Shown one piece after another: positions 27,588 through 63,200 of a DNA stretch of 64,000 bases (position 1 is the stretch's first letter; the number at the start of each line of letters is the position of its first letter). The notes under the pieces were generated by a model that saw only the letters and a list, made by a program, of their open reading frames with translations, had not been told where the DNA came from and searched no databases. This DNA comes from Macrostomum lignano (lineage: Eukaryota): contig NIVC01001502.1 of assembly GCA_002269645.1 (NCBI GenBank), positions 131,827 to 195,826 of the forward strand. Reading direction: 5' to 3'. A program made the translations under genes and the position numbers.

Positions 27588-29742
<2,155 letters not shown>

Positions 29743-30594
29743 GATGTCAATAAATTGCTGATTTCACAATTGCTAATAACTGACTCCCGAAAGATCGACG
29801 CGCGCACCTTCTGGCATAAAGCGTTTGAAAATTAGTTGAATCATCATCATAATTCTTGATAAAATATGCAATATTCTTATAAGCTACTTATCAAATAGAA
29901 ATATAGGCTAAATATAATTTAAAAAATAAATAACGAACAAAATTTATTTTCAAAATTAAGAAATGCCGTCCAGGAAAAGAGATGTTATTATTGCTGATCA
30001 AAGTCAAACAGTGTGTGTGTTTTAGCTGCGCCACGACAAATTTGGCAGACGATTGAGCGCATAATAATAATGATAATAATAATAGTAATAATATAAAAAT
30101 TGCTTTTACAATCAGAGCGTGGGGGCTGAGCGCACAGACAAAAATGACTGAGAGAAAAAAATCGAAAAAAAATAACAAAGAACAGTTGGGACTTCCGGGA
30201 GGGGGAGGAGGATTTGGCGAACTCGAACTAATTCGACACAAAAACCTTATAAAAGCGCAAAGACTCGAGAGAATAAATGTGACTGAAAAGTGTTTGCAAG
30301 CCAGAAAAGTACATTCATAAAACATAAAGCATAGGCAGTTCCGGTCAGATGTTTTCGAATGTTAATCGGGTACTTAAAAAAAACTTTTTTATTTCTGTGT
30401 CAATTTTGTCAAGAGCAGAACTTTCAAATAGATGGAAAACGCACGGGGTAGAGCAGAGTATTAAAGATAGCTGGATAACAAAATAAACGCAAATGCGCGA
30501 AAAACTGCATCTAAAAGCATCGTAGACTGGATTTGAGCACGGAGTATTGATTTTTTCTTATCGGAGCATTTTTAGAAAAACTTGTGCATTTTTT

Positions 30595-31350
30595 ATGGAG
30601 ACTTGATCGGCTCATTGGGGAGACTTGATCAGCTCATTGGGGAGACTTGATCAGCTCATTAGGGAGACTTGATCAGCTCATTGGGGAGACTTGATCAGCT
30701 CATTAGGGAGACTTGATCAGCTCATTAGGGAGACTTGATCAGCTCATTAGGGAGACTTGATCGGCTCATTTGGGAGACTGAAAAATTAGTCAATTAGTGA
30801 CACTTGGACTATTTTATTAAAGGGAGTAAGAACAGTCTATTAGGGAGACTAAAACCAGTCCATTAGGGAAACTCAGACCCGTCAATTAGGGAGACTAAGA
30901 CCAGTCAATTAGGGAGACTAAGACCAATTCATTAGGGAGACTAAGACCAGTCGATTAGGGAGACTAAGACCAGTTCATTAGGGAGACTAAGACCAGTACA
31001 TTAGGGAGACTAAGAGCAGTCCATTAGGGAGACTAAGACCAGTTCATTAGGGAGACTAAGACCAGTCCATTAGGGAGACTAAGAGCAGTCCATTAGGGAG
31101 ACTAAGAGCAGTCCATTAGGGAGACTAAGAGCAGTCCATTAGGGAGACTAAGACCAGTCCATTAGGGAGACTAAGAGCAGTTCATTAGGGAGACTAAGAC
31201 CAGTCCATTCGGAGACTAAGACCAGTCCATTCGGAGACTAAGACCAGTCCATTCGGAGACTAAGACCAGTCCATTCGGAGACTAAGACCAGTCCATTCGG
31301 AGACTAAGACCAGTCCATTAGGAGACTAAGAGCAGTCCATTAGGGAGATC
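30595..31350. repeat. Two related arrays: 22 bp ttagggagacttgatcagctca (30595-30780) and 23 bp ttagggagactaagaccagtcca (30838-31350)
   Basis: Both share the cattagggagact core. Confidence 0.92.
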
Positions 31351-31456
31351 AACCTATTAGAGATAATTAGAGTAGTCAATGATTAGACAAAATTTCAGCC
31401 TTAAAAGTCAGTCGAAGTGAGTGAACACGATCATAAAAGGTATTCATGTTTGCTTT

Positions 31457-34400
31457 TCACCGCCTTCGGCGCGGTTTAATCGGCGCCCGTCGAGTCGCTT
31501 CGCCAGCGCCGCCACCAGCCGCAGAGAAGTTGAAATTTGGCGCCGGCGCTTGCGGCGCAGCTCCAGCGACGGCCGCGCCAAGAGAGAAATTGAAGCTGGA
31601 ACCACTGGATGACTGCTGCTGCTGATTCTGCTGTTGTTGCGGCGGCTGCTGTCCGAAGCTGAACAAAGAGCCGCCAGTTGAAGAAGTCGATCCAGCGGTA
31701 GCTGCCGACTGGCCAAACGTAAAGCCGGTGCCGGCGCTGGTTGAAGATGGTGGCGCATTTGGCGCGGCATTTGCAGCGCCGGAATTATTAGCGCCAAAAC
31801 TAAAGCTGGGATTTGAGGCTGATTTGCCGAAACTGAACGGATTGGGAGAAGCGGCGGCAGCCGGTTTTGCCACGGTGGACTGGTTGCTGCTCGCTGATTG
31901 GCCGAATAGGGTACCGGCTGATGACGTGTTCGAAACTGATTGGCCGAAAAGTAGACCAGTGGATGAGTTGCTCGAAGCTGATTGGCCGAAGACTGGAGCA
32001 GCGGATGACGTGTTCGAAGCTAATTGGCCGAAGACTGGAGCAGCGGATGACGTGTTCGAAGCTGATTGGCCGAAGACTGGAGCAGCGGATGACGTGTTCG
32101 AAGCTGATTGGCCAAAGACTGGAGCAGCGGATGACGTGTTCGAAGCTGATTGGCCAAAGACTGGAGCAGCGGATGACGCGTTAGAAGCTGATTGACCAAA
32201 AAGCGACGTTCCTGAAGACTTACTGACAGTGGAGGCAGCATGACCAAACAAATTATTGGCAGATGCGGTAGTGGCAACGGTCTGTCCGAAAACGGAGGAG
32301 CTCGATGATGCAACCGAAGATGCTTTACCAAAGGTGAATGCACCGGATGTTGAAGATTTAGAAGCAGAGTAACCAAATGCGGAAGCCGTGGAAGCTGTAG
32401 TGGCAGCAGGTTGGCCAAATACGGAACTTGTGGAAGAAGCACTTTTACTAAATACGAATCCTGAACTAGCAGATGACACATTTGAACCCGACTGGCCGAA
32501 AATTGGTGCGGCAGATGACGCATTTGAAGCTGATTGGCCAAACACCGGACCAGCTGATGACGTGTTGGAAGCCGATTGGCCAAAGATTGGACCATTTGAT
32601 GACGTGTTAGCAGCTGATTGGCCAAAGATCGGAGTGGCAGATGACGCATTTGAAGCTGATTGCCCAAACACTAGACCAGCTGATGACGCATTGGAAGCTG
32701 ATTGGCCAAAGATTGGACCAGCCGTTGGCTTACTAGAAGCTGATTGGCCAAAGATTGGACCAGCTGATGACGTGTTGGAAGCTGATTGGCCAAAGATTGG
32801 ACCAGCCGTTGGCTTACTAGAAGCTGATTGGCTAAAGACGGGACCAGCTGATGACGTATTAGAATTTGATTGGCCGAAGACTGGAGCAGCAGATGACCTA
32901 TTAGAAGCTGATTCGCCGAAGACTGGAGCAACAGATGACGTGTAAGAAGCTGATTGGCCAAAAACTGGAGCAGCAGATGACGTATTAGAAGCTGATTGGC
33001 CAAAAACAGGAGCAGCAGATGACGTATTAGAAGCTGATTGGCCAAAAACAGGAGCAGCAGATGACGTATTAGAAGCTGATTGGCCGAATGCTGGAGCAGC
33101 AGATGACGTATTAGAAGCTGATTGGCCGAAAGCTGGAGCAGCAGATGACGTGCTCAAAGCTGATTGGCTGAACACAGGAGCAGTAGTAGAAGTTTGACCA
33201 AAGCCTGTAGCTGTAAAACTTGCAGAAGCATTATTATTAAAAGAAGAGTTTGAAGCAGCCAGGTTTAAACCTGATGCAGTAGTTGAGCCTAAAGCTGGTT
33301 GACTAATCACTGGAGCTACAGATGCAGCAGTAGACGCAGTGTTGGAAGCTGCCTGACCAAATGTTACAGCGGCAGACGGAGTGTTGGAAGCTGCCTGACC
33401 AAATGTTACAGCGGCAGACGGAGTGTTGGAAGCTGCCTGACCAAATGTTACAGCGGCAGACGGAGTGTTGGAAGCTGCCTGACCAAATGTTACAGCGGCA
33501 GACGGAGTGTTGGAAGCTGCCTGACCAAATGTTACAGCGGCAGACGGAGTGTTGGAAGCTGCCTGACCAAATGTTACAGCGGCAGACGGAGTGTTAAAAG
33601 CCGTTACAGTTGTCACAGGAGCTGACGTGTTCGAGGCTGCTGTAACTGACACGGAGTCTGCAGACGGGGTCTTGGAAACTGTTTGGCCAAAGCTCACTGC
33701 TGCGGATGAAGTGTTGGTAGCTGTTATATTACTAGCAGTAGTTGGAGTTTCAGAAAAAGCGGTCCCCAGCACGGGAGCGTTGAGAGACGAAGTGTTAGAA
33801 TCCGGCTTACGAAATTCTGCCAAAGGCGTTGCCGAAGCGGCAAGGTTCAGCACAGGTGCAGCGGCGGCAGCGGGCGTGCTAGGACTGCTATTCAACGAAT
33901 TATTCGCCGCAGCTGCAGATTCTCCCGCAAGCAGGCGACGAATTCTTTCCCGACGACTGGCTCTGGCCTGACGGTCGCGTTCGCGAGCTTGCCGAGCGGC
34001 GGCCAGTCGGTCTATCGGTGAGGCGCCGCTCGGCATCGTCGACGAAAATTCCTCGCCGACGGTATCGCTGGCCGATACGGCGGCATCATCCCGACGCCTG
34101 CCGGAGCGCTCCAGGTTGGCGACCAGAGCGGAGACGGTAGCCCGAGCTGACGACTGCTGCTGGTGGTGCCTGCGACGCGCCGATGCCGACAATATCGAAG
34201 TCGACGAAATCGACGGCGAAGGCGAAACCAAACCGACATTGGTCGCTTCATCGACGCCGACTGTCGCAGTTGGTTCGGTACTGGGCGTAACTGCCGCTAG
34301 TTGAAGCGGCGCGGCAGCAGGTCCGGAAGTATCTCGCTGCTCCGACGGCGCCGGCTCCGTCGCCGGAAGCGGCGGCGGCAAAATCCGCCTAGGCGCCACC

Positions 34401-35113
34401 GGAAGCCGAATTGGCCCGCCGCCGAGCACTTCGCGCAGCGACGTCGCTTTGAATTTGCCGCCGTCTAATCCGCCGCCAGATTCCGACGTTGGTCCGGCTG
34501 CCGCGGCGGCGCCGCCACTAGACGAATCACCTAGGATGTCGTCAAGAGCAGCGGCGGCTGCTGCGTCGGCAGCGGGTGTCGCAGCGGCGATGCTGACACG
34601 TCGTCGCTTTTTCTTTGTCGAAAAAGAAGTCGCCGACGCGTCTTCAAAGTCGGCCCTATTCTCCACGTCCGGATTGACGTCCTCAGCAATGTCGGCTGCT
34701 TCCCCGCCGCCTTCTGCATCGTCGTTGTTGATGCTGGGCGGCGCCAGGGAGCGCCGTTTCCTGGTCTCGATGATGCGCAGGGCGCGCAGCACGCTGGTCT
34801 GCTCGTCCTCGTCTCGAAGCACTGGCTGCTGCTGCTGCTGCTGCTGCTGATGCGGCCTCGGCGGCAGCGGCATGGTGCACCTACTGGGCGGTCCACGTTG
34901 AAACGGCGACTTCTTTGCCGACACTGATAGCTCTGTTGACGCCAACTGGCGGCTGGTGAGCACCGACGAAGTTGGCCGGCTGGCTGCAGTCGAAGAGGGC
35001 AGCAGGCCGACTGAGATGCTCGCCGGCGATTTGGTCGTCGCCGCGGCGGCGGCATCGGCAGCGGCGGCGGACCGCTTCGAGAAGCTGTAGTAGCCGGAGG
35101 CTCTCGGACGCAA
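31457..35113 (-). CDS. FG-repeat nucleoporin-like protein (Nup153/POM121-like C-terminal architecture); one 1218-codon exon without its own start exon
   Basis: Uninterrupted ORF starting at a phase-0 acceptor (tattccag|TTG CGT). More than 30 FGQ motifs in S/T/A-rich 14-aa repeats, basic NLS-like motifs (TRKRR, KKKRRR), and a basic C-terminal tail RRAPIKPRRRR resembling Nup153/Nup1 ends. No zinc fingers or TM segment visible. Confidence 0.8.
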   Translation of the reverse strand: MRPRASGYYSFSKRSAAAADAAAAATTKSPASISVGLLPSSTAASRPTSSVLTSRQLASTELSVSAKKSPFQRGPPSRCTMPLPPRPHQQQQQQQQPVLRDEDEQTSVLRALRIIETRKRRSLAPPSINNDDAEGGGEAADIAEDVNPDVENRADFEDASATSFSTKKKRRRVSIAAATPAADAAAAAALDDILGDSSSGGAAAAAGPTSESGGGLDGGKFKATSLREVLGGGPIRLPVAPRRILPPPLPATEPAPSEQRDTSGPAAAPLQLAAVTPSTEPTATVGVDEATNVGLVSPSPSISSTSILSASARRRHHQQQSSARATVSALVANLERSGRRRDDAAVSASDTVGEEFSSTMPSGASPIDRLAAARQARERDRQARASRRERIRRLLAGESAAAANNSLNSSPSTPAAAAAPVLNLAASATPLAEFRKPDSNTSSLNAPVLGTAFSETPTTASNITATNTSSAAVSFGQTVSKTPSADSVSVTAASNTSAPVTTVTAFNTPSAAVTFGQAASNTPSAAVTFGQAASNTPSAAVTFGQAASNTPSAAVTFGQAASNTPSAAVTFGQAASNTPSAAVTFGQAASNTASTAASVAPVISQPALGSTTASGLNLAASNSSFNNNASASFTATGFGQTSTTAPVFSQSALSTSSAAPAFGQSASNTSSAAPAFGQSASNTSSAAPVFGQSASNTSSAAPVFGQSASNTSSAAPVFGQSASYTSSVAPVFGESASNRSSAAPVFGQSNSNTSSAGPVFSQSASSKPTAGPIFGQSASNTSSAGPIFGQSASSKPTAGPIFGQSASNASSAGLVFGQSASNASSATPIFGQSAANTSSNGPIFGQSASNTSSAGPVFGQSASNASSAAPIFGQSGSNVSSASSGFVFSKSASSTSSVFGQPAATTASTASAFGYSASKSSTSGAFTFGKASSVASSSSSVFGQTVATTASANNLFGHAASTVSKSSGTSLFGQSASNASSAAPVFGQSASNTSSAAPVFGQSASNTSSAAPVFGQSASNTSSAAPVFGQLASNTSSAAPVFGQSASSNSSTGLLFGQSVSNTSSAGTLFGQSASSNQSTVAKPAAAASPNPFSFGKSASNPSFSFGANNSGAANAAPNAPPSSTSAGTGFTFGQSAATAGSTSSTGGSLFSFGQQPPQQQQNQQQQSSSGSSFNFSLGAAVAGAAPQAPAPNFNFSAAGGGAGEATRRAPIKPRRRR

Positions 35114-35151
35114 CTGGAATACGGAAATTTGCTTACGATTTATGATTGTGC

Positions 35152-35845
35152 TCAGCTAGGGATCAAAGAGACTCAATGGGAGTTACTCGGCTAGGGATCA
35201 AAGGGACTCAATGGGAGTTACTCAGCTAGGGATCAAAGGGACTCAATGGGATTTACTCAGCTAGGGATCAAAGGGACTCAATGGGAGTTACTCAGCTAGG
35301 GATCAAAGGGACTCAATGGGATTTACTCAGCTAGGGATCAAAGGGATTCAGTGAGATTTACTCAGCTAGGGATCAAGGGGATTCAATGGGATTTACTCAG
35401 CTAGGGATCAAAGGGACTCAATGGGATTTACTCAGCTAGGGATCAAGGGGATTCAATGGGATTTACTCAGCTAGGGATCAAAGGGACTCAATGGGATTTA
35501 CTCAGCTAGGGATCAAAGGGACTCAATGGGATTTACTCAACTAGGGATCAAAGGGACTCAAAGGGATTTACTCAGCTAGGGATCAAAGGGATTCAGTGGG
35601 ATTTACTCAGCTAGGAATCAAAGGGACTCAATGGGATTTACTCAGCTAGGGATCAAAGGGAATCAATGGGATTTACTCAGCTAGGGATCAAAAGGACTTA
35701 ATGGGATTTACTCAGCTAGGGATCAAAGGGACTCAAAGGGATTTACTCAGCTAGGGATCAAAGGGATTCAGTGGTATTTACTCAGCTAGGAATCAAAGGG
35801 ACTCAATGGGATTTACTCAGCTAGGGATCAAAGGGATTCAATGGG
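35152..35845. repeat. Minisatellite, 35 bp unit ctcagctagggatcaaagggactcaatgggattta
   Basis: About 20 tandem copies between RPS3 and the FG exon. Confidence 0.96.
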
Positions 35846-36039
35846 GTACTAAGCATAATAGGACACGCCTACTAGTCGATAGAATAACAAAGACAAACTA
35901 TTAAACAAAGATTCCAAGCCAACAAACTTCCAGTCGCCAACTGCAATCAGTCTCTTTGCTCACAGAGACAAGCAAATTTACTAATTTTAACCATAGTATT
36001 CATTGAAAGGTCCTCCAACGCAATCCTTCAACAGGCTGT

Positions 36040-39000
36040 TTAGGCCACGGCCATGACCTCAGCCTGAGGCTTCTGCTGCTTATTCTCCGAATAAGGCTCG
36101 GCCGGCACCGGCTGCTCTTTGGGATCGGCGATGGTCACGTGATCCGGCAGGGGCTTGCGGGGCGCGACGCCTCCAGCCGGGGCCTCCCAGTTCTGCATGA
36201 TCTTCACCTGAGAGGAATTGAGATTGGAGTTAGTGAGTCGTACAGCGGTTCATACAGTGAGTCATACAGGAGTCATACAGTGAGTCATACACGAGTCATA
36301 CAGTGAGTCATACACGAGTCATACACGAGTCATACACGAGTCATACAGTGAGTCATACAGTGAGTCATACAGTGAGTCATACAGTGAGTCATACACGAAT
36401 CATACAGGAGTCATACAGGAGTCATACAGTGAGTCATACACGAGTCATACAGAAGTCATAACTGATACAGTGAGTCAGATCAATAAGCCTCACCTGGATG
36501 CCCAGTACACCCTGCCGGAGCTGTACGTGCCGCACAGACCGGTCAATGAAGCGGACAGACGGCTCGCCGCTGTGGATCATGAAGCCTTCAGTGAATTTCA
36601 TCGATTTGGCGCGCTGACCGCGCAGCTTGCCGCTAACAATGACTTCGGCGCCTTTGGCGCCAGACTCCATAATGAAGCGCAGCACGCCGTAGCAGGCGCG
36701 ACGGACAGCCAGGCCACCGAGAAGCTTGTAGCGCAGGGACTCGGCCTGCATGGTTGGGTTGGCAGTTTGTTTTAGTAAAGAGGATTGGATTCTGCTAGTA
36801 GAGTGCAAGTTAGTTATGCCGTTTGGGGCAACATGACGGTAAATCGGTGACGCTGATTGATCTGGCGCCATCTGACGCTGATTGTTGATCTGGCGCCATC
36901 TAACACTGATTGATCTGGCGCCATCTGACACTGATTGATCTGGCGCCATCTGACGCTGATTGTTGATCTGGCGCCATCTAACACTGATTGATCTGGCGCC
37001 ATCTGACGCTGATTGTTGATCTGGCGCCATCTGACGCTGATTGTTGATCTGGCGCCATCTAACACTGATTGATCTGGCGCCATCTGACGCTGATTAATCT
37101 GGCGCCATCTGACACTGATTGATCTGGCGCCATCTGACGCTGATTGATCAGGCGCCATCTGACGCTGATATATCTGGCGCCATCTGACACTGATTGATCT
37201 GGCGCCATCTGACACTGATTGATCTGGCGCCATCTAACACTGATTGATCTAGCGCCATCTGACACTGATTGATCTGGCGCCATCTAACACTGATTGATCT
37301 AGCGCCATCTGACACTGATTGATCTGGCGCCATCTAACACTGATTGATCTAGCGCCATCTGACACTGATTGATCAGGCGCCATCTAGTACTTATGTTTGC
37401 TTTTAATTTAGTCTTGGCATCATACTTTTCTTAAATAGCTGTCGTCATAAGTTGGTACGAATGTGAACAGCAGATATAGATGTTAAAATCATTGCCATTA
37501 GTACTAAAACTTAAAATTATTGGCTTATGAATTTACGAGTACATGTATGTTTGTAGTCAAGGACTGAATGATGAGATTGGGATCGGGGGTGGGACTGAAC
37601 TGAAGATGGTATCAGATAAGAGACTTAAGATGTGCTCATACAAAGCATGTTGCTGTCGTCATAGCTCAAATCTTTAAGGCTAACGAATGTGAACAGCAGT
37701 AATGCAATTTAATCATAGCTGCTCATATAAAACAACAAAATCATATTTTATGAAATCAATTCCAGTTGGCATCATACTGAACAATATGTTGTCGGCATAA
37801 CTTGTACGAATGTGAACAGCAGAATGGTTATAATCACTGCCAACTTGGGAATTCACGGGAGATGGGACTCGGGATGGGTCTGAGGATGGGACTGAGGATG
37901 GGTCTGAGGATGGGTCTGTGGATGGGACTGAGGATGGGTCTGAGGATGGGTCTGAGGATGGAACTGAGGATGGGACTGTGGATGGGACTGAGGATGGGTC
38001 TGAGGATGGGACTGAGGATGGTCTGAGGATGGGTCTGAGGATGGGACTGAGGGTGGGTCTGAGGGTGGGACTGAGGATGGTCTGAGGATGGGTCTGAGGA
38101 TGGGACTGAGGGTGGGTCTGAGGGTGGGACTGAGGATGGGACAGAGGATGGGTCTGAGGATGGAACTGAGGATGGGTCTGAGGATGGGACGGAGGATGGG
38201 TCTGAGGATGGGACGGAGGATGGAACTGAGGATGGGTCTGAGGATGGGTCTGAGGATGGGTCTGAGGATGGGACGGAGGATGGGACGGAGGATGGAACTG
38301 AGGATGGGTCTGAGGATGGGTCTGAGGATGGGACTGAGGATGGGACTGAGGGTGGGACGGAGGATTGGTCTGAGGATGGGACTGAGGGTGGGTCTGAGGG
38401 TGGGACTGAGGATGGGACAGAGGATGGGTCTGAGGATGGAACTGAGGATGGGTCTGAGGGTGGGACTGAGCATGGAACTGAGGATGGGTCTGAGGATGGG
38501 ACGGAGGATGGGACGGAGGATGGGTCTGAGGATGGGACTGAGGATGGTCTGAGGATGGGTCTGAGGATGGGACTGAGGGTGGCTCTGAGGGTGGGACTGA
38601 GGATGGGACAGAGGATGGGTCTGAGGATGGAACTGAGGATGGGTCTGAGGATGGGACGGAGGATGGGTCTGAGGATGGGACGGAGGATGGGACGGAGGAT
38701 GGGTCTGAGGATGGGACTGAGGATGGTCTGAGGATGGGTCTGAGGATGGGACTGAGGGTGGCTCTGAGGGTGGGACTGAGGATGGGACAGAGGATGGGTC
38801 TGAGGTTGGAACTGAGGATGGGTCTGAGGATGGGACGGAGGATGGGTCTGAGGATGGGACGGAGGATGGGACGGAGGATGGGTCTGAGGATGGGACTGAG
38901 GGTGGGACGGAGGATGGGACTGAGGGTGGGTCAGAGGATGGAACTGAGGATGGGACAGAGTTACAAATGATAAAATCTGTCACCAAGGCAACGCTCAACC

Positions 39001-39318
39001 CACCTGTGCCACAGCGGACAGACCCCTGTTGGCCATCTTCTCCGCGTAGATTTCAATCTGGCCATCCTCGAAGCCGAATCGTTTCTGCAGCACGGCGGTG
39101 AGCTCGCGAACCTTGCGGCCCTTCTCGCCCAGCACGCTCTGGGTGCGGGTGGCCAGCACGATCACCTCGATCTTGGCCGGGGTCACGCGGAGCTCGATGC
39201 CCGAGTACCCGTCCTCGGCTAGTTCGCGCTTCAAGAATTCGTCCAGTTCGGCGCGGAACACGCCGTTGGCAACGAATGCCCGCTTCTTGCTCATCACAGC
39301 ATTCTTGCTGGCGGCCAT
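36040..39318 (-). CDS. RPS3: 40S ribosomal protein S3 (uS3), 244 aa
   Basis: Exons 39318-39004, 36745-36494, 36207-36040, phase 0. Motifs [65 protein letters not shown]. Confidence 0.98.
36232..36478. repeat. Minisatellite, 14 bp unit gagtcatacagt/cacg, RPS3 intron 2
   Basis: Tandem copies. Confidence 0.92.
36850..37386. repeat. Minisatellite, 23-26 bp unit ctgattgatctggcgccatctgaca, RPS3 intron 1
   Basis: Tandem copies. Confidence 0.94.
37415..37497 (-). ncRNA. Box C/D snoRNA, diverged paralog (type 3)
   Basis: TGGCA stem - C ATGATTT - guide CTGCTGTTCACATT - D' CGTA - C' ATGACGA - D ATGA - TGCCA stem; 83 nt, sense to RPS3. Confidence 0.72.
37632..37721 (-). ncRNA. Box C/D snoRNA, type 2, RPS3 intron 1
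   Basis: C ATGATTA (37716-37710), guide ACTGCTGTTCACATT, D' CGTT, C' ATGACGA, D ATGA (37639-37636); terminal stem weak. Confidence 0.62.
37764..37845 (-). ncRNA. Box C/D snoRNA, type 1, RPS3 intron 1
   Basis: 8-bp terminal stem AGTTGGCA/TGCCAACT directly flanking C GTGATTA and D ATGA; guide CTGCTGTTCACATT before D' CGTA; C' ATGCCGA; 82 nt. Confidence 0.78.
37855..38960. repeat. Minisatellite, 12 bp unit gaggatggg(t/a)ct
   Basis: Tandem copies with higher-order block duplications. Confidence 0.96.
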
Positions 39319-39349
39319 GCTTGCATGCGGACAGTGGATACTCTTATTT

Positions 39350-52238: not shown

Positions 52239-54029
52239 TCAGTTGGAGTGCAAATGTATGGTCGGATTCGATCCGTACAGCGTCAAAATCTGGCTGGCAC
52301 GACGACCAGTGAGCGCCTCGTTCGAAGCGCTGATCGACTGTCGCCTATCAGCGTCTCCAGATTCGTCGCTATCTTCCGATGCGGCCGGTTGGTCGTCGTC
52401 CTCGTCGCTGGTGTAGCCGATCTTGCCGCACAGGTAGGCCATGATGAGCGCCGAAGCCTCCAGCAGTTCGAAGCCGGTCAGGACGGAGAAGCCCAGAAAT
52501 AATCCCAGAGTGCCACCGATGTCCGACAAGTAGTTATCGATAGCGTAGGCCTGCTTCTCAATGATGTGCTCGGCCATCACACCGTCAACGTACACGACCA
52601 GATTGAGCAGGTTCCTTCGAGCAGCAAGCTTGGTCTGGTTTTTCAGATCGGCTACTTTCGGCTTGACGTCGACCAGGTCCCCAAACAGGCGCATCTCGTA
52701 ACTGTCGGTTGGCCACTCGCTGAGGGACTGCTTGAACGTAAAGTGTGACTCCTCGCACGGCAACTGACAGTCGCACTTGAGGTCACCCTGGTCCGAAGCG
52801 TACACGGTGTTCATCAGGCAGGACAACTGCTCCTCAGTCTGACACGGCTTAAGTCGCGCTTTCAGGTTGCTGTAGTAGACGGCGTTGGCCCTGTCGTAGC
52901 AGCCGCACAGCTTGTGCACGCGATCGTACAGGCAGAGCATGGTGCAAGCGTTATAGGTGTACTTGAAGCCGTGGTTTTGAAGAAAGCCTTCGCCATCGTG
53001 ACAGCTGCCCTTCGGCCGGTTGATGCGGTTGATCATGCGCAGCGACATGCCGATTGAAGTTTGAAAGCCGGGTGGCACCGAGAAGCCGGTAGTCTCTGGA
53101 AAGGCCAGCGAGCCGAACTCGTGAATGTGCACCTTGATACCCGAGCTCGGGATGAAATTCTGCAGGTATTCTTCCAGCTCAAGATAGAGCGTCAAGATGA
53201 GGCCGTGCTCTCGACCATTCTTGCCAATCACTGGCCTACCAGCCATGGCAGACTGCCAACCGTTGAAGGTGAAGCAACTGCCGTAAGTCTTAGTCAAGGA
53301 AACGCTGAAGTGCTTGGTGTTGCACCGCTGGCCGGCAAAGCTGCACTGCAGAATGAGGTCGGACATCTGGTAGCCCATGCGCAAGCGTTGCTCGGGCGTG
53401 TGGTTGCTAATGAGCCTGTGAAAGCGCATCCAATCGACCTGCTGAGTCATCAGTTGAGTTCCGTTATCCACCACCGAGTAGTTTTTTGTTTCTAGGCCGG
53501 CGATGAAGCGCTGCAGGTCCGGCTGGCCAAACAGGCTGACCATCGAGCGGCGGAGCGGGTTGTGGTTGCAGACCGTGACCGACGGGAACTCGAAGGGTTT
53601 GTAGGACAGCTGAATAATGGTGGACTTGGGATCGCTGAAATAAGTCCTGCTGAGGCTGTACAGCTGCCGGATTGTTAAAATCAGACAGACGGTGAATGCG
53701 ATGGCCCAAAGAGTTTTGAACACCGGATGACTGCGCTTAACAATGTTGCTGATGGCGAGTAGGCTGGTGTTGGACAGCAGCGCGTCCAGGAAATCTTTGA
53801 TGTTGTTCTCGTAAAGCGTCTGCTCTTCGCGCGTCCGCCGCTTTGGTCGCAGTTTTTCGCGAATAAGCCGTCCGTTGAACTTGCCAGAATTTGAGTCTTC
53901 GTCGGTGGACTTGGTTGCGCCATAGTCTGGCAACCCGGATGTCCGGGATGAGTCTGCCTTCTCGTCGTCCGAAGACTTTTCCAAGGATGTGACTCGTTTC
54001 TTGGAGCTGTCAGATGACTCTTTAGACAT
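52239..54029 (-). CDS. DEG/ENaC (ASIC/FaNaC-like) sodium channel subunit, 596 aa, intronless
   Basis: TM1 LWAIAFTVCLILTIRQL, post-M1 FPSVTVCNHNP, YGSCFTFN, G++LTLYLE, Cys-rich thumb, and TM2 YLSDIGGTLGLFLGFSVLTGFE. Confidence 0.93.
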   Translation of the reverse strand: MSKESSDSSKKRVTSLEKSSDDEKADSSRTSGLPDYGATKSTDEDSNSGKFNGRLIREKLRPKRRTREEQTLYENNIKDFLDALLSNTSLLAISNIVKRSHPVFKTLWAIAFTVCLILTIRQLYSLSRTYFSDPKSTIIQLSYKPFEFPSVTVCNHNPLRRSMVSLFGQPDLQRFIAGLETKNYSVVDNGTQLMTQQVDWMRFHRLISNHTPEQRLRMGYQMSDLILQCSFAGQRCNTKHFSVSLTKTYGSCFTFNGWQSAMAGRPVIGKNGREHGLILTLYLELEEYLQNFIPSSGIKVHIHEFGSLAFPETTGFSVPPGFQTSIGMSLRMINRINRPKGSCHDGEGFLQNHGFKYTYNACTMLCLYDRVHKLCGCYDRANAVYYSNLKARLKPCQTEEQLSCLMNTVYASDQGDLKCDCQLPCEESHFTFKQSLSEWPTDSYEMRLFGDLVDVKPKVADLKNQTKLAARRNLLNLVVYVDGVMAEHIIEKQAYAIDNYLSDIGGTLGLFLGFSVLTGFELLEASALIMAYLCGKIGYTSDEDDDQPAASEDSDESGDADRRQSISASNEALTGRRASQILTLYGSNPTIHLHSN

Positions 54030-54865
54030 TCTATTGCCTAGAGGCTTGGTAGAGACTGCAGTGGCAACGAGCGAGTTTTTGGATCGTGCTGCTTAAAACT
54101 CCTATCAAACCCGTTGTCAAGCAAAGGAACTTGAAGCTCTCGCCAAACAATCCCGAGATTTGCGTGCCAAAGCACTGCACTGGCTTGAGTCCTACGTGTG
54201 CAGTAGCTAGCCTAATATCGATATTGGAATCCCCATTCCAATCCAACGCCCTTCCTTAAAGTGATCCCCAAATATTCTTCCTGCGCAACCCCTACTCAGC
54301 CACTGCCCATAGCGCTGTTGAGGAAAAAGCGAGACGAAAAAATTTCTGCCGATTTTAGTTAAAAATGCGCGGTAGACCTGCACTGTTGAGGCAAAACTTT
54401 GTTGGAAACCAAAAAGTGTAGGAGAAAGGGAGACTCAAGGTGCTGCGCCAGGTTACGCCTACTCAGTCTCAAGCGTAGCCTACAGCTAGCTACTCAAATT
54501 AAGGAGGGAAAGAGATTCAGGAGATTAGTATTATAGTCAATCGAGAAGCAGTTGATGGCAACAGCTGCGCAGTGTACTGCACGCTCCCTAGCGAACAGCA
54601 GGCCCGGAAGATCGAGGTTTGATCCCTGCAGCATGCCAACTGTGGACAAGGGGAGAACTTCTCTGCAAAATTTGTTGTTCCGACAAGAGTTGGCCCCCCT
54701 AAAAACTGAAGCAGCAGACTCTGCTTTCGGTGAGATACGCATTAAATGGAAACGTAACTTTTCGCCTTTTTAGTACTTGGTTAAGATCAATATTCCAAGC
54801 AGACGAGATTTCTGGGACACAATAAAGCGTGGTTGTACATCAACTTTCATTTCCTTGTACGGCTA

Positions 54866-57234: not shown

Positions 57235-60200
57235 TCACATGTCCGTCTCGCTGTCCTCGGAGTCCACCGCGTAAGATGGTCGCAGTCGGTTTAGCCGATT
57301 CGGGAAAATGATTGTCTCGCGCCTCTGCCTGAGGAATGGATCCTGCATTCCATTGGCGTGTTTTTTAATGTTAGATTTCAGATGGCACTGACTGGACAGC
57401 CAGAGAGAGACGGCAGACGGAACAGACTGACAGAGAGCTGATAGAAGCCAAGGCATTCACGCAAATAGACATCCTTACAGGCAGACACACGGACACTAAG
57501 ACAACCTTACAGGCAGACATGCATACACTATAAGACATCCTTACAGACGGACATTCAGACACTAAGACACTCTTACATGCAGACATGAGGACACTAAGAT
57601 ATCCATACAGACAGACATGTGGGAACTAAGACATCCTTACAGACAGACATTCAGACACCAAGGCATCCTTACAGGCAGACATACAGACACTAAGACACCC
57701 TCACATGCAGACATGCGGACACTATAAGACATCCTTACAGACAGACATGCGGACACTAAGACATCCTTACAGAGACATACAGACACTAAGACACCCTCAC
57801 ATGCAGACATTCAGACACTAAAGCATCCTTACAGGCAGACATGTGGACACTAAGGCATCCTTACAGGCAGACATGTGGACACTAAGACATCCAAAACAGA
57901 GACTCACATCGGATTTGACATCCTCCGGCACAGCCAGCCGTCGAAGCGGCTGTCCGTCCTTGCCGTCGCACACGTGTTGGTGATGATGGTGATGCCAGTC
58001 GCCGGACTCAGTCACGTTGTCCAAGTCGAACTGGTCAGTGCCGCCAGACTGCACGTTCAAATCGAAGCTGTTGTAGAGGAAGGGCAGGCGGTTGTGCAGA
58101 CTCTTGGCCAGCGCTTTGATTCTCAATTTGCGCTTCTCGCTAGCCAGCAGGCGACGGCTGAGCTCCCGGCCGCTCACCAGACCAAGGAGGGTGGCGGTCA
58201 CAACCTGTGGGTTCGGTTTCGAGTCCATTGGTCTTGCTGTAACTGTAACATTCGAGACCAACAAGGGTAAGGTAGGGGTGTGGAGAACCGGTCAGTGGTA
58301 AAGTTCCAGCAGTTCCTTAAGGGTTACATGCCTGATGATGGAAAGTAAGGCTCATTTTACACCCTGTCAACCCCCAAGGCACAGTGAAGGAACGGCTAGG
58401 GCCGCTGTACATCTTCACTCCTGTGAAGATGTGTGCCTGTGCGTATGACTGCGTACGGATCCGCGCGGTTGTGTGCATGCTCAGGGGAGTCGGCGGAATG
58501 GGCAGTAATGCCTCTCGCCGGTTGCGACGTGCGCCTACGAGCGTATGTATTCAAATTCATGCACTTTCCATGGGTCAGCAATACGTTGGTCATCTTGATT
58601 TGACAGCCCTCTGCAAAGTTACTAGCTGGCGAAGGTTGCAGTTTCGGCCCTAAATTCGAACCAGAAACTATTGAAGCAGTTTAGGGGTAGCAAAATGTAC
58701 CCTCGTAAAAAACCTTGATTTCGCATTAACCATTGAACGAGCCGTGGATAAATCTCTTTGGCCGATCACGGTCAACACAGTTTGTGATTGGTTTCATGGA
58801 AGGAGTTTAAACCGGGTATCATATGTTGTCGCCAAGGACACTTACGAGCCAACAGTGGTTAAAGCAGAGCGTGGATGGTTGAATGCTAAAATCTTACGGA
58901 AGCAACTGTACCGAAAGCCCTTCTCTGAACCTAAAAGATCCTTCATAACATTGGGGACTGCCAATGCAAGTCAAGCTGCCTCCTCGTATTTAGCTCACGT
59001 GCTTTCCAATCGAGTCCAGTCGAACGCTGCGAATTTCCAGCTTCTCCTCGTCCTCGAAGTCGCCTTGCTCCATGGTGGATCCGGCGGCTGCCAGCTGCTG
59101 CAGCTGGCGACGCTTCTTCAGCTTTCGTTTGCACACGGTGCTCCACCGCATCATTGAGTCTGAATTTGTTATCGAAGCCGAATAGAAAAATGCTGATATA
59201 TAAAGGGTGACGCAAAAACGGATGAAAATTGAACGGTCTCTAATCCATTAGCAGGCTGGCTAAAAAGTCTGACTCACACGTCATGTCAATGAAACCGACG
59301 CAGTTCGTCCAAGTCTTCACCTCCGCGTCCGCATTGATCTGCTGCACGTCGCCAACAATGAGACCGATGAACAGATTCATGAGCACTATCGGCATGGTCA
59401 CCACGAAGAAGAAGTACACGAACCGAGTCAGAACATCGTCATAAACCTGCAGACGGGTGTTGGGAGATCATTGGAATAATGGTAGGTCAGTTTGGGATGA
59501 ATGGATATGATGCGAAGCTCTTAATTAATTGGTCGGTAACAATTGTACTTGCGCTCTGAAAGCATTGCAATTGGGAGCCGGGAGCCACTAGGCAGACACC
59601 TAACTATACGAGCGTACATTTAGAGCTCTCAGACCAGTCAGTTCTAATTAATTTCAGGTAAGAGAGCTCCGCAGCTCAAGTGGTCTAATGCGACGGCAGG
59701 CAATGTGCTATGCAATTATGGCCAAAGTTAATCGCGTAATGACATTATGGCGTTGAAATTACAGTCACAAAACTTTTAGAATACCTTAGCAGAAAAAGCC
59801 AGAGCTATTTAATTACAAAATAGTGGTCTAAAGAGACTATACTCACCAGCTTCTGATCCTTCAAATCGAGCTTTCCATCGTCCCTGTTGTAGATTGCACT
59901 GAAAATGTCATTGTAATCCAATCCACCCGTCATCATGTCGAAAACTTTGAAAAACGACACCCAGTAATTTCTGAAGTTGTAATGATTGTAGAGCAGCATG
60001 TGGAAGACTTGAACGAAGGCCATGATGAAGCTAAGAAAAGAGATGAGCACGCCCATGCCAGTCTTCACGGACGTGTAGAACATCATGACGTAAGTGCTGA
60101 ACACTTGGAAGCGGGAAAGGTAGAAGAACATCATGCTCCAGGCTAGAAAGGCGGCAACAACTGACACATTCCATTGCCAGTTCTCTCTGAAGCCACTGGA

Positions 60201-63200
60201 CCAGGGGCATTCGGACACGTTGATGCACGAGAGCAAGATCAGGGTGTACATGGTAAGCTCAATTAGATTCTGGAACCAGCCCTTGAAGTACTGTCGGGTA
60301 CTAGTGACAGCTTGGTAGATCTCTTTGAGTATGCAAGCCGCTGTGATGGCCAGCAGCACGTACTGGGCGGGCGTGATCCAGAACCAGCCGCGGTCCCAGT
60401 CGTACACGGGGCAGCGATTGAACCGTGGCTCGCTGCCGTTCAGGCAATGGGCAGAGTCCAACAGGCGGCCGTTGCACACTTCGCAGCTGGAGTTGAAAGA
60501 CCTGCAGTCGGCGGAGTGGTGAACGAAGAAGCCGATTTCGGGGCACTTGGCGTAGGGACAGTTGAAGTAGCCCGTGACCCGGTAGGACTCCGGGGTGCGC
60601 ATCAGATGAAAGCCGGAATAGTAGCTCGCCTCCGACCTGGGGTTGTTGGTGACCCAGGTCAGGTGGCCGACCAGCAGAGCCAGGTAGGCCAGGTGGAACA
60701 AGTTCATAAACACGGCGACAAAGAAGGAGCCGACGTAGAAGCGCTCGAGGTACTGAGTAACCATCGGGTGACTTTTCAGCGTAGCGTTTCCGGCCATGAC
60801 GCGCATAAGGCGGGAGTTCATCCTATCCGGTTCACCGTCGGGCTGGCGGAAAATGCCCTGCTCCATGCGCACGGCTTCAACTATCAGCTTTGGTTTCTTC
60901 TTTTTTTCAGCGGCCTTGCTTTTCTTCTTCGAAGCGACTCCTTCAGTCGGCTGGTCTTCGGCCGTCTCGACGTCCACCGCCTGCGTGATGATGTCGCAGG
61001 TCAGGAAGTAGTCGTACACCAGCACTAGAATCGAAAGTGCATCGTCGTCGTCGATTGCTAATTTGAGCAGGCCGATGTGATGCCGTTGGACATACTCATG
61101 CCAGTACCGCTGGATCACTGAATCCCTGGGATCGTGTCTGTTCTCATGTGCCTTGTTCTCAAATGCCAGGTTGTCGCGGGTACCATGACTGTGACCGCCT
61201 CCGTGCCCGTTTGGGGGCGCTAAATGTTCCGCATTGTCCAGGCTGTCGTGGTGATGGCCGTGGCTTTCGCATGGCGTCTTTGAATTGAGCATCTCCAAGA
61301 GCTCTGGGAACTTTTGAATGCTCTCCAAGATGGTTGATGAACTGACATTCATCAGAACTGCAGGAAACCGTCGCATCAGGTCCAGCACCAGAATTGATAC
61401 GCCAAAAGACAGAGCCAGTGACAGCGCACTGATGCTCACATCTCGGTCATCGACGTCCTTGAGCGTGAAGCTGTGACCAGGATCGATGCCCTCGCTGAGC
61501 AGAAAGTTGAAGACTTCCATGAACTGGCGGACTCGTTCCTCTTCCAGGGTGCCGTCCGCCTCCATCTCCTTGAGACCCGCGCCGCAGATCTCCACGAAAG
61601 CCATTAGCAAGGTGTAGCGACCCATCACCTGGCATTTCATGTTGAAACCCTTGCCTTTCAGCGTCTTCAGCGCCACCAGCAGCATCTTGTAGCGCTGATT
61701 AAAAGTCCGCATCAGCACTACGGCCAAGTTGCAGCACTTCTTGTCGCGAATGTTCAACCGAAAACTGTCCGGCATCTTGCGCAGCAGGCTGAGCGACAGC
61801 CAGCCGGGACAGCTGGGCTCGAAGGCTGCGAATATTGACACCTTGCCGTCCACCACGGCGTTCAAATCGAACTGGGCCGCCTCAATTACATCCAGATACT
61901 CCGGCAGCAGGCGCGACAGCTTCTCTTTGGGCAGCAGAGACTCGTTAAAGTCGGTCTCCCTGAACAGGAAGTGGATCATCCAGTGGAACAGGCTGTCCTT
62001 GTAGCGCTGCCGACGAATCGAATCGGAGCTGGTCGAGGCGGCGAAGCTGCTGAGCGACTCCAAAACGAGGCCCAGGCTGGTGGGACTCAGGGAGGCCCTC
62101 TGGTTGGCGTCGTCAACTACGGGCGACAGTTTCAGCTCCCAGCGCACGCCCTGGATCAGCGCCATGGACAGCTGAGAGGGAAAAGTGATGGGAAAGTATG
62201 AGTCATCAACCAGAAATTGCCGAGTCTTAGTAGTAGCAGGGATTTAATGCTATGCTGCTGATTCTCCGTTATACAACCCATAGGCTCAGGTAGCAGCACT
62301 ACAAGCCAGGTATTAATAATTCATCCAACAGACGCAGTACACAAGCTTATTGTTCTAATGGTTAATTATTAAGTTAGAGGGCAGCGCATCTACACGGGGT
62401 CCATGCACAGAAAGTTGGTCGCATGTGAAACCCTTTTTTACTATGGTCATGCAGGCCGAAATTGATCGTATTATCATAGAAAGGAGCTGATAAACACTAA
62501 TTTAAACAAAACAGAATGTGCTTTGTTGTCGTTTGAAGACGTCTCGGATTAACTAAAAAGTTTTCTACCTTTTTTGATTATAATAAAAATGCTACTAACT
62601 TGAGCAAGGAAGGATTCATGCTCGCTCTTTGTACTGTGTATACAGTTGATCTCAACCTCAAACAGCTACTCGTTCCCGACCATATAATCGTTACCTAGAG
62701 ACGTTAGTCTGTCATAAAGAAAGAAAAGTCCTTTTCGACCGCAGTACAATAATGACGTGCCCACTGTGGAAGAGCTCGAGTGCTACAGTTGGCAATTCCG
62801 CATTGGCCCCAGTGCGGATCAAGGACTTCACTTGAAAGAATTTGTCACTCAAACCCAACCCCACCCTGATCCCAAACTGCTCTGCACTGTACAGTAAAGC
62901 TGCTTAACTGACACAACGAAAATTATAATTGTCAACCTCCAATTTCTTTTTGAAATGAAAAGTACGCTTTTTACACTTCAATCATCAGGCAGTCAATACT
63001 TTCAATCAATTACTCTACTTTTTATGCATCAGTTATACCCCGCACCTGTCATTCCCCACCTGCAATATGCTTTCTCACCTGTTGCACGCTGGGAAAGATG
63101 CTGGAGATGCTCACGTGCCTGGAAAAGTGCTTGAGTAGAGTTCTCACAGTCGCTGGGGGGATTTGCGGATTGCGCAGCATCTGAACCACAACGTTCATCT

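What the first reader, a model, noticed from the sequence alone, without database searches (positions are those of the whole stretch)
34873..36040. FG-nucleoporin exon without a start codon directly behind RPS3: candidate operon using a spliced-leader AUG
Seen: the 1218-codon ORF opens at a phase-0 acceptor (35113). Its first in-frame ATG is codon 81 (34873), and the first ATG after the acceptor (35055) is out of frame. Only 926 bp separate it from the RPS3 stop, about 690 bp of which is minisatellite, and I find no phase-compatible ATG exon in the gap. Established: flatworm spliced leaders end in AUG that can serve as initiator, and SL trans-splicing resolves operons. Inference: if this is a flatworm, SL-AUG + TTG CGT gives MLRPRA... 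in frame, making RPS3 to Nup a dicistronic unit, possibly extending to PSMA5.
Basis: partly seen in the sequence, partly recalled or inferred. Interest (0 to 1): 0.7.

Follow-up and report, generated by a model that had tools for sequence, protein, structure and literature searches.

The report
Flatworm nucleoporin gene started by spliced-leader AUG
A Macrostomum lignano FG-nucleoporin gene just downstream of RPS3 has no start codon of its own and most likely takes its AUG from the trans-spliced leader, which is a clear example of a mechanism already known in flatworms.

Summary
The window is Macrostomum lignano, assembly Mlig_3_7, scaffold NIVC01001502.1 (23,276 nt identical). Its 35-nt spliced leader (SL) ends in ATG.

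Evidence that the SL supplies the start codon:
- The acceptor TTCCAG|TTG (first exon base 35113) fits the published trans-splice acceptor motif [T/C]TNCAG.
- The public GenBank CDS of this gene runs exactly 35113-31457. It starts on the first base after the acceptor and has no ATG. A CDS starting there needs a transcript 5' end at 35113-35115, as expected from an annotation cut at mapped SL reads.
- Codons 1-80 carry the gene's own codon signature in frame 0 (0-1 of 2000 shuffles match it), and it begins at the acceptor.
- A diverged paralogous locus has cag|ATG exactly where this copy has cag|TTG. The next 15 residues (RxRAxGYYSFSKRSA) are conserved, largely through synonymous changes. Met81 is not conserved.

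The operon with RPS3 meets the published working definition: 926 bp, or 231 bp without the minisatellite, and 353 bp in the paralogous locus. Co-transcription itself is not shown. Extension to PSMA5 is not supported. No SL-junction read could be retrieved. This is a good instance of a known mechanism, not a new one.

The parts
39004..39318 (-). RPS3 (uS3) exon 1, ATG at 39318-39316, donor CAG|GTGGGT
   Evidence: (KH_2). GenBank CDSs here are 5'-partial, starting at 39315 or 39321.
36494..36745 (-). RPS3 exon 2 (AESLRY...GVLGIQ)
   Evidence: Ribosomal_S3_C.
36040..36207 (-). RPS3 exon 3 with stop TAA at 36042-36040. Contains a weak phase-0 donor-like site, GAG|GTCATG, at 36058/36057.
   Evidence: The old fused gene model P0001 used this donor-like site.
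35977..35982 (-). AGTAAA, the likely RPS3 poly(A) signal, followed by a GU-rich stretch. It corresponds in position to AGTAAATAAATAAA in the paralogous locus L003.
   Evidence: Inferred; no poly(A) read was seen.
35114..36039 (-). 926-bp RPS3-Nup spacer, the putative intercistronic region or outron
   Evidence: It is 353 bp in paralogous loci L003 and L005.
35151..35845 (.). 35-bp minisatellite, 19.9 copies. Absent from the paralogous loci.
35114..35119 (-). Splice acceptor TTCCAG, matching the M. lignano trans-splice acceptor motif [T/C]TNCAG
   Evidence: motif from PMC8629364. The same acceptor is used by fused model P0001. It is homologous to TTTCAG in L003.
31457..35113 (-). FG-nucleoporin ORF of 1218 codons plus stop. 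Identical to the extent of the GenBank CDS (L002 14203-17859).
35066..35113 (-). Codons 1-16, LRPRASGYYSFSKRSA: a conserved N-terminal motif. TTG at 35113-35111 sits where the paralog has ATG.
35053..35055 (-). First genomic ATG after the acceptor. Out of frame, weak context.
34871..34873 (-). First in-frame genomic ATG (codon 81), good Kozak context caccATGc. Not conserved in the paralog (M versus R). Possible secondary start by leaky scanning.
29740..29742 (-). ATG of the proteasome alpha (PSMA5-like) gene. Its CDS is complete. Not shown to belong to the same unit.

Best explanation
The window is Macrostomum lignano. The FG-nucleoporin pre-mRNA is trans-spliced at TTCCAG|TTG (35114/35113) to the 35-nt spliced leader ...CAATTTATTGCATG. 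The SL's terminal AUG is in frame and directly next to the first genomic codon, so it acts as the initiator and the protein begins M-LRPRASGYYSFSKRS... This gene copy has no start codon of its own: TTG occupies the position where the paralog has ATG. Some ribosomes may skip the weak-context SL-AUG and start at Met81.

The gene lies 926 bp downstream of RPS3, or 231 bp without the minisatellite. It is most likely the downstream cistron of an RPS3-Nup operon that is resolved by RPS3 polyadenylation plus SL trans-splicing.

Shown: the sequence features, the identity of the organism, the extent of the annotated CDS, the coding status and conservation of the N-terminus, and the ATG/TTG difference.

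Inferred: that the SL is actually joined at 35113, that the SL-AUG is used, and that the two genes are co-transcribed.

My estimates: trans-splicing with an SL-AUG start about 0.85; co-transcription with RPS3 about 0.6.
For: 1. **Organism.** Locus L002 (GCA_002269645.1, NIVC01001502.1) is 100% identical to the window over 23,276 nt.
2. **SL.** The M. lignano SL is CGGTCTCTTACTGCGAAGACTCAATTTATTGCATG, and 30-39% of genes are trans-spliced (PMC8629364; PMC5730564). A Logan RNA-seq contig of a Macrostomum RPS3 mRNA carries ...TACTGCGAAGACTCAATTTATTGCATG at its 5' end.
3. **Acceptor.** TTCCAG fits [T/C]TNCAG. It is one of only two such sites in the gap.
4. **Annotation.**
   - The GenBank CDS extents equal ATG-to-stop for PSMA5 and SIAH.
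   - For the Nup the extent is exactly 35113-31457.
   - A CDS that starts there needs a transcript 5' end at 35113-35115. Any longer transcript would extend the ORF up to 35155, or would switch the predicted start to Met81.
   - The annotation pipeline cuts transcripts at mapped SL-read peaks.
5. **Coding signal.** With a frame model trained on codons 161-430 or 161-1218 of the same gene, codons 1-80 favour frame 0 by 0.59 or 0.80 bit per codon. Only 0 and 1 of 2000 dinucleotide shuffles reach this. The signal switches on at the acceptor.
6. **Paralog.**
   - The paralogous loci L003 and L005 have catttcag|ATG CGG... at the homologous acceptor.
   - Fourteen of the first 16 residues are identical, against 38% identity for the whole N-terminal domain.
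   - Five codons in this stretch differ only synonymously, including AGA versus CGC for Arg.
   - Met81 aligns with Arg.
7. **The T is real.** T at 35113 is present in L001, in L002 and in the independent ML2 assembly, where codon GA+T = D in P0001.
8. **Operon criteria.** Same strand; repeat-adjusted distance 231 bp here and 353 bp in the paralogous loci, against a threshold of 1 kb and a mode near 100 bp. The RPS3-Nup adjacency is kept in all four loci.
Against: - No SL-junction read or cDNA for this gene could be retrieved. The Nup proteins are absent from the searchable protein collections, and the metagenome scan found nothing.
- The SL-AUG context (uugcAUGu) is weak, whereas Met81 has a good one.
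- In the paralogous loci the annotated CDS starts 13 codons further in, at aag|CGG. So the choice of SL site may vary, or the annotation there may be imprecise.
- For RPS3 in this window, 5'-partial CDS starts do not fall on an AG. A 5'-partial start in this annotation is therefore not always a clean SL site.
- Co-transcription is inferred only from spacing and from the conserved adjacency. Published figures imply that about 60% of trans-spliced M. lignano genes are not in operons.
Confidence: 0.75

Rival explanations
1. The Nup is SL trans-spliced and uses the SL-AUG, but it has its own promoter inside the spacer (a monocistronic gene with a short outron). It is not co-transcribed with RPS3.
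For: Published figures imply that about 60% of trans-spliced M. lignano genes are not assigned to operons. The spacer is AT-rich (35-39% GC) and contains a 695-bp minisatellite of unknown activity. RPS3 is expected to be expressed far more highly than a nucleoporin.
Against: In the paralogous loci the whole spacer is 353 bp, and the RPS3 3'UTR with its AATAAA signals takes up about the first 130 nt. That leaves roughly 220 bp for a promoter. The adjacency is conserved across diverged paralogous loci. The old ML2 gene model bridged both genes.
Confidence: 0.25
2. Translation normally starts at Met81 (34873). The 80 upstream codons are a 5'UTR that happens to be open in a GC-rich sequence.
For: Met81 has a good Kozak context, caccATGc. 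All three frames are open in this stretch. The SL-AUG context is weak.
Against: Codons 1-80 carry the gene's frame-0 codon signature. The first 16 residues are the best conserved block of the N-terminal domain between paralogs, with synonymous changes. Met81 is not conserved, and the paralog's next in-frame ATG is around codon 137. The out-of-frame ATG at 35055 precedes Met81 on any mRNA that starts at the acceptor.
Confidence: 0.05
3. The acceptor at 35113 is used in cis. The upstream partner would be a small ATG exon in the gap (ATG AAT ACT ATG|GTTAAA, phase 0), or the donor-like GAG|GTCATG inside the last RPS3 exon, which would give an RPS3-Nup fusion as in UniProt A0A1I8FFD9.
For: Both joins are phase-compatible. 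The fused model P0001 uses exactly this acceptor. Flatworm acceptors are often shared between cis- and trans-splicing (PMC12582326).
Against: Both donors depart from the GT[G/A]AG consensus. The one consensus donor in the gap (CTCT|GTGAGC, GT at 35963) is phase 1 and leads to a dead-end frame that stops at TAG 34884. P0001 comes from an error-ridden assembly and hops between frames. The newer annotation keeps RPS3 and the Nup separate, and starts the Nup CDS at the acceptor, which excludes an upstream coding exon in that transcript.
Confidence: 0.05

Closest known systems
Schistosoma mansoni mRNAs that need the SL 3'-terminal AUG as initiator (Cheng, Cohen, Ndegwa and Davis 2006, J Biol Chem 281:733; 'slORFs' in PMC9851317)
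   Same: A flatworm SL ending ...UUGCAUG; the acceptor placed in phase 0 so that the SL-AUG is in frame; no genomic AUG at the start of the conserved coding sequence.
   Different: Here the evidence comes from genomics and annotation only, with no cDNA or translation assay. A paralog that keeps a genomic ATG at the same position serves as an internal comparison.
Macrostomum lignano operons as defined by Ustyantsev and Berezikov 2021 (PMC8629364) and the polycistronic transcriptional units of Wudarski et al. 2017 (PMC5730564)
   Same: Adjacent genes on the same strand; downstream gene trans-spliced; repeat-adjusted spacer well under 1 kb; the spacer inflated by a tandem repeat, which that paper describes as typical.
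   Different: Membership here rests on their working criteria. The precursor RNA for this pair was not seen here.
Caenorhabditis elegans operons resolved by SL2 trans-splicing
   Same: 3' end formation of the upstream gene, followed at short distance by SL addition to the downstream gene.
   Different: M. lignano has a single SL type and no SL2 specialisation. The nematode SL does not end in AUG, so it does not supply an AUG start codon.

Membership tests
Flatworm mRNA initiated at the SL 3'-terminal AUG | The species has an SL whose last three bases are AUG | tested here: met
   The window is M. lignano. The SL sequence comes from PMC8629364. The SL 3' part...TTGCATG, is present at the 5' end of a Macrostomum RPS3 RNA-seq contig.
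Flatworm mRNA initiated at the SL 3'-terminal AUG | [quoted passage not shown] | tested here: inconclusive
   The motif matches and the GenBank CDS starts exactly at 35113. No SL-junction read could be retrieved.
Flatworm mRNA initiated at the SL 3'-terminal AUG | The SL-AUG is in frame with the main ORF, with no stop in between | tested here: met
   The acceptor is at codon position 1, and the frame is open from 35155 to 31460.
Flatworm mRNA initiated at the SL 3'-terminal AUG | Conserved coding sequence lies upstream of the first genomic in-frame AUG | tested here: met
   Codon-frame test. Conservation of residues 2-16 between paralogs with synonymous substitutions; Met81 not conserved.
Flatworm mRNA initiated at the SL 3'-terminal AUG | Translation actually starts at the SL-AUG | not testable with these tools
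   This needs ribosome profiling, N-terminal proteomics or a reporter.
M. lignano operon (working definition of PMC8629364) | Adjacent genes on the same strand with no gene on the opposite strand between them | tested here: met
M. lignano operon (working definition of PMC8629364) | Repeat-adjusted intergenic distance below 1 kb | tested here: met
   926 minus 695 = 231 bp; 353 bp in L003 and L005.
M. lignano operon (working definition of PMC8629364) | The downstream gene is SL trans-spliced | tested here: inconclusive
   Indirect only, as for the SL-junction feature above.
Operon in the strict sense | A single polycistronic precursor RNA from one promoter | not testable with these tools
   The only hint is the fused ML2 gene model P0001.
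FG nucleoporin | FG-repeat region recognised by PF13634 above the gathering score | tested here: met
   95.3 bits against a cut-off of 32.2, in 7 stretches. Orthology to a named nucleoporin was not established. The N-terminal domain has no Pfam or PDB match and no homologue outside M. lignano.
Ribosomal protein uS3 (RPS3) | KH_2 plus Ribosomal_S3_C domains and a full-length match to eukaryotic uS3 | tested here: met
   (100% identical to PAA67202 and PAA76247).

The most novel reading that the evidence does not exclude
One pair of duplicated loci (the window and L001) lost the genomic start codon (ATG to TTG at the first exon base). The diverged paralog pair (L003, L005) kept it. Because the SL-AUG sits in frame immediately upstream, the loss would have been silent (MM-R... 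becomes M-L-R...). This copy would now depend on trans-splicing for translation of its conserved N-terminus. That would be a natural example of the SL-AUG buffering start-codon loss and locking a gene into trans-splicing. The direction of change (ATG ancestral) is assumed, not shown.
Probability: 0.55. Interest if true: 0.45.

Novelty: new member of a known kind. Interest (0 to 1): 0.3.

Why it matters
For annotation, this CDS and others like it are stored as 5'-partial proteins without a methionine. Adding the SL-AUG would complete them. An older model wrongly fuses this gene to RPS3 (UniProt A0A1I8FFD9).

For biology, the ATG/TTG pair of paralogs gives a simple test case, in a flatworm that can be made transgenic, of how far the SL-AUG is really used as an initiator and whether it makes genes dependent on trans-splicing.

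It does not change the general picture. SL-AUG initiation and repeat-inflated operons are both already described in flatworms.

Tried and rejected
- **Protein searches.** Two word-indexed searches with the Nup N-terminus (one with the window sequence, one with a window-plus-paralog alignment) and the exhaustive HMMER search found only the fused ML2 model P0001. This gave no orthologues and no RNA-seq-derived fragments.
- **Exact look-ups.** The full ORF and the Met81 ORF were not on record. P0001 was not on record either. The exact L003 Nup translation is not in the protein collection.
- **Reconstructing the 1120-aa GenBank product.** There are 20 GT/GC-AG candidates for the 294 nt removed.
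- **Metagenome scan.** A scan for the exon's first 40 nt found nothing.
- **SL gene.** The SL 35-mer is not in the window.
- **Supplements.** Those of the eLife 2016 and Nat Commun 2017 papers hold no usable entry for this locus. Wasik et al. 2015 is not held.
- **General codon model.** A model trained on other genes in the window does not resolve the frame even in undoubted Nup coding sequence, so I dropped it in favour of a model trained on the gene itself.
- **Open frame as evidence.** Rejected, because all three frames are open.
- **Gene names as evidence.** Mlig008787g1 and g3 are both RPS3 copies, so these names say nothing about membership of a transcriptional unit.


Full report
**What is in the sequence**

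Everything lies on the minus strand.
- The 1218-codon ORF runs 35113-31457. It is an FG-repeat nucleoporin (PF13634, E = 4e-27).
- It is preceded by gtaTTCCAG|TTG. The stop-free frame opens 14 codons further up, at 35155.
- The first in-frame ATG is codon 81 (34873). The first ATG after the acceptor (35055) is out of frame.
- RPS3 has three exons: 39318-39004, 36745-36494 and 36207-36040. It ends with TAA at 36042-36040, so the spacer is 926 bp.
- Of that spacer, 695 bp (35151-35845) is a 35-bp minisatellite.
- A proteasome alpha subunit gene follows, with its ATG at 29742.

**Organism**

The Nup N-terminus hits a single protein among 5.8 billion: UniProt A0A1I8FFD9 of Macrostomum lignano (confirmed by an exhaustive HMMER search). 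That protein is a frame-hopping gene model from the old ML2 assembly. It fuses RPS3 to this Nup through exactly this acceptor.

The RPS3 protein led to GenBank entries of assembly Mlig_3_7 and then to their loci.
- L002 (NIVC01001502.1) is 100% identical to the window over 23,276 nt. The window is NIVC01001502.1:131827-195826.
- L001 is a near-identical duplicate.
- L003 and L005 are a diverged paralogous pair.

**Known background**

- The M. lignano SL is CGGTCTCTTACTGCGAAGACTCAATTTATTGCATG.
- 30-39% of genes are trans-spliced, and the trans-splice acceptor motif is [T/C]TNCAG.
- About 15% of genes lie in operons. Spacers in operons peak near 100 bp once repeats are subtracted. The working threshold is 1 kb (PMC8629364; PMC5730564).
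- All reported flatworm SLs end in AUG, and this AUG can initiate translation (Cheng et al. 2006, as cited in PMC9851317 and PMC12582326).
- For Macrostomum, the final ATG is explicitly called a start codon in PMC10468722.
- A Logan RNA-seq contig of a Macrostomum RPS3 mRNA begins with the SL 3' part...TTGCATG.

**Is the ATG-less stretch coding?**

The open frame alone proves nothing, because all three frames are open here. Two independent tests say that it is coding.
1. A frame model trained on later parts of the same gene prefers frame 0 for codons 1-80 by 0.59-0.80 bit per codon. Only 0 and 1 of 2000 dinucleotide shuffles reach that. The signal starts at the acceptor; the minisatellite upstream scores negative in all frames.
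2. In the paralogous loci the homologous acceptor reads catttcag|ATG CGG CGC CGC GCC ACA GGC TAT TAC AGC TTC TCA AAG CGG TCA GCC. The window reads attccag|TTG CGT CCG AGA GCC TCC GGC TAC TAC AGC TTC TCG AAG CGG TCC GCC.
   - Fourteen of 16 residues are identical, against 38% identity for the whole N-terminal domain.
   - Five codons differ only synonymously.
   - Met81 aligns with Arg.

So translation must begin at or before codon 1. This copy has TTG where the paralog has its start codon. The T is present in L001, in L002 and in the independent ML2 assembly, so it is not an assembly error.

**Where does the mRNA start?**

The CDS extents in the GenBank annotation run from ATG to stop for SIAH and PSMA5. 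For the Nup the extent is exactly 35113-31457. A CDS that begins there without an ATG means that the transcript model starts at 35113-35115. A longer transcript would have extended the ORF towards 35155, or made Met81 the predicted start. That annotation cuts transcripts at peaks of mapped SL-containing reads. This is the nearest thing to direct evidence available here.

Caveats:
- In the paralogous loci the annotated CDS starts 13 codons further in, at aag|CGG. This is also phase 0, so the SL-AUG would again be in frame.
- For RPS3 in this window the 5'-partial starts do not follow an AG.

**Other sources of a start codon**

- The gap has three ATGs, each with a short ORF.
- The only phase-0 joins to 35113 use poor donors: ATG|GTTAAA in the gap and GAG|GTCATG inside RPS3.
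- The one consensus donor (GTGAGC, GT at 35963) is phase 1 and runs into a stop.
- A second YTNCAG site at 35940 leads nowhere.

**Operon**

- The genes are on the same strand. The spacer is 231 bp after subtracting the repeat, and 353 bp without any repeat in the paralogous loci.
- There, AATAAA signals lie about 115 nt after the RPS3 stop, and about 215 nt remain before the acceptor.
- The RPS3-Nup adjacency is kept in all four loci.
- This meets the published working definition, but a precursor RNA was not seen.

**PSMA5**

PSMA5 is a different matter.
- Its CDS is complete.
- An in-frame TGA lies just upstream, at 29766-29764.
- The nearest YTNCAG acceptor is 540 nt away.
- The upstream region is 35% GC.
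- It is not the Nup's neighbour in the paralogous loci.

**Verdict**

The finding is an instance of a documented flatworm mechanism at a locus whose public annotation already places the mRNA 5' end at this acceptor.

The one new point is the ATG/TTG contrast between paralogs. It suggests that the SL-AUG made loss of the genomic start codon harmless.

Noticed in passing
window 39300-39330 (-); L003 9990-10010; L004 1-60: The two GenBank RPS3 CDSs in this window are 5'-partial (AASKNAV... from 39315; SMAASK... from 39321), although a genomic ATG sits at 39318. The genomic GCATG (39320-39316) is identical to the last 5 nt of the SL, and neither annotated start follows an AG. The paralog has a clean cttcag|CCACATGG acceptor, and a Macrostomum RNA-seq contig shows the SL on an RPS3 mRNA. 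RPS3 itself therefore seems to be trans-spliced, but the junction in this copy is unclear.
   Followed up: partly
window 31457-35113 (-); L001 14215-17829: The annotated Nup product has 1120 aa, while the uninterrupted ORF has 1218 codons. So 294 nt inside the FG repeats are annotated as intron (252 nt in L001). This may be an artefact of assembling transcripts through the repeats. The L001 and L002 ORFs differ by 42 nt, which is one 14-residue FG unit.
   Followed up: partly
UniProt A0A1I8FFD9 (P0001) versus window 39297-34015: This old ML2 gene model, named '40S ribosomal protein S3', is a chimera of RPS3 and the Nup N-terminus. It hops between all three frames because of indel errors in that assembly.
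   Followed up: yes
L003 11708-15130; L005 11710-15132: The paralogous Nup copy (1140 codons from its ATG) has degenerate FG repeats and no longer reaches any Pfam model. It keeps the N-terminal motif, several short islands (SVLRxLRI, FKATSLxEVL, TVSALVA, RQARERxRQ...RIRRLLA) and a basic C-terminus.
   Followed up: partly
window 34882-35963 (-): A consensus donor-like site, CTCT|GTGAGC, lies 80 nt after the RPS3 stop. If it were spliced to 35113 it would continue the small ORF starting at ATG 36003 in another frame. That frame ends at TAG 34884-34882, 8 nt before Met81. It is probably part of the GU-rich element downstream of the RPS3 poly(A) signal.
   Followed up: no
window 29742-31456 (-): The Nup 3' region has no canonical poly(A) signal until AATAAA at 30818, inside or behind a 23-bp minisatellite (30613-31348). 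The stretch upstream of PSMA5 is AT-rich (35% GC) and contains several short upstream ORFs.
   Followed up: partly
whole window: Other genes in the window: a DEG/ENaC (ASC) channel ORF at 52242-54092 (-); SIAH, CDS 45716-42018 (-); a multi-PDZ gene on the + strand, about 11-25.5 kb; an 812-codon ORF at 59808-62243 (-) with no Pfam match. Almost every intron and intergenic stretch carries its own minisatellite.
   Followed up: partly
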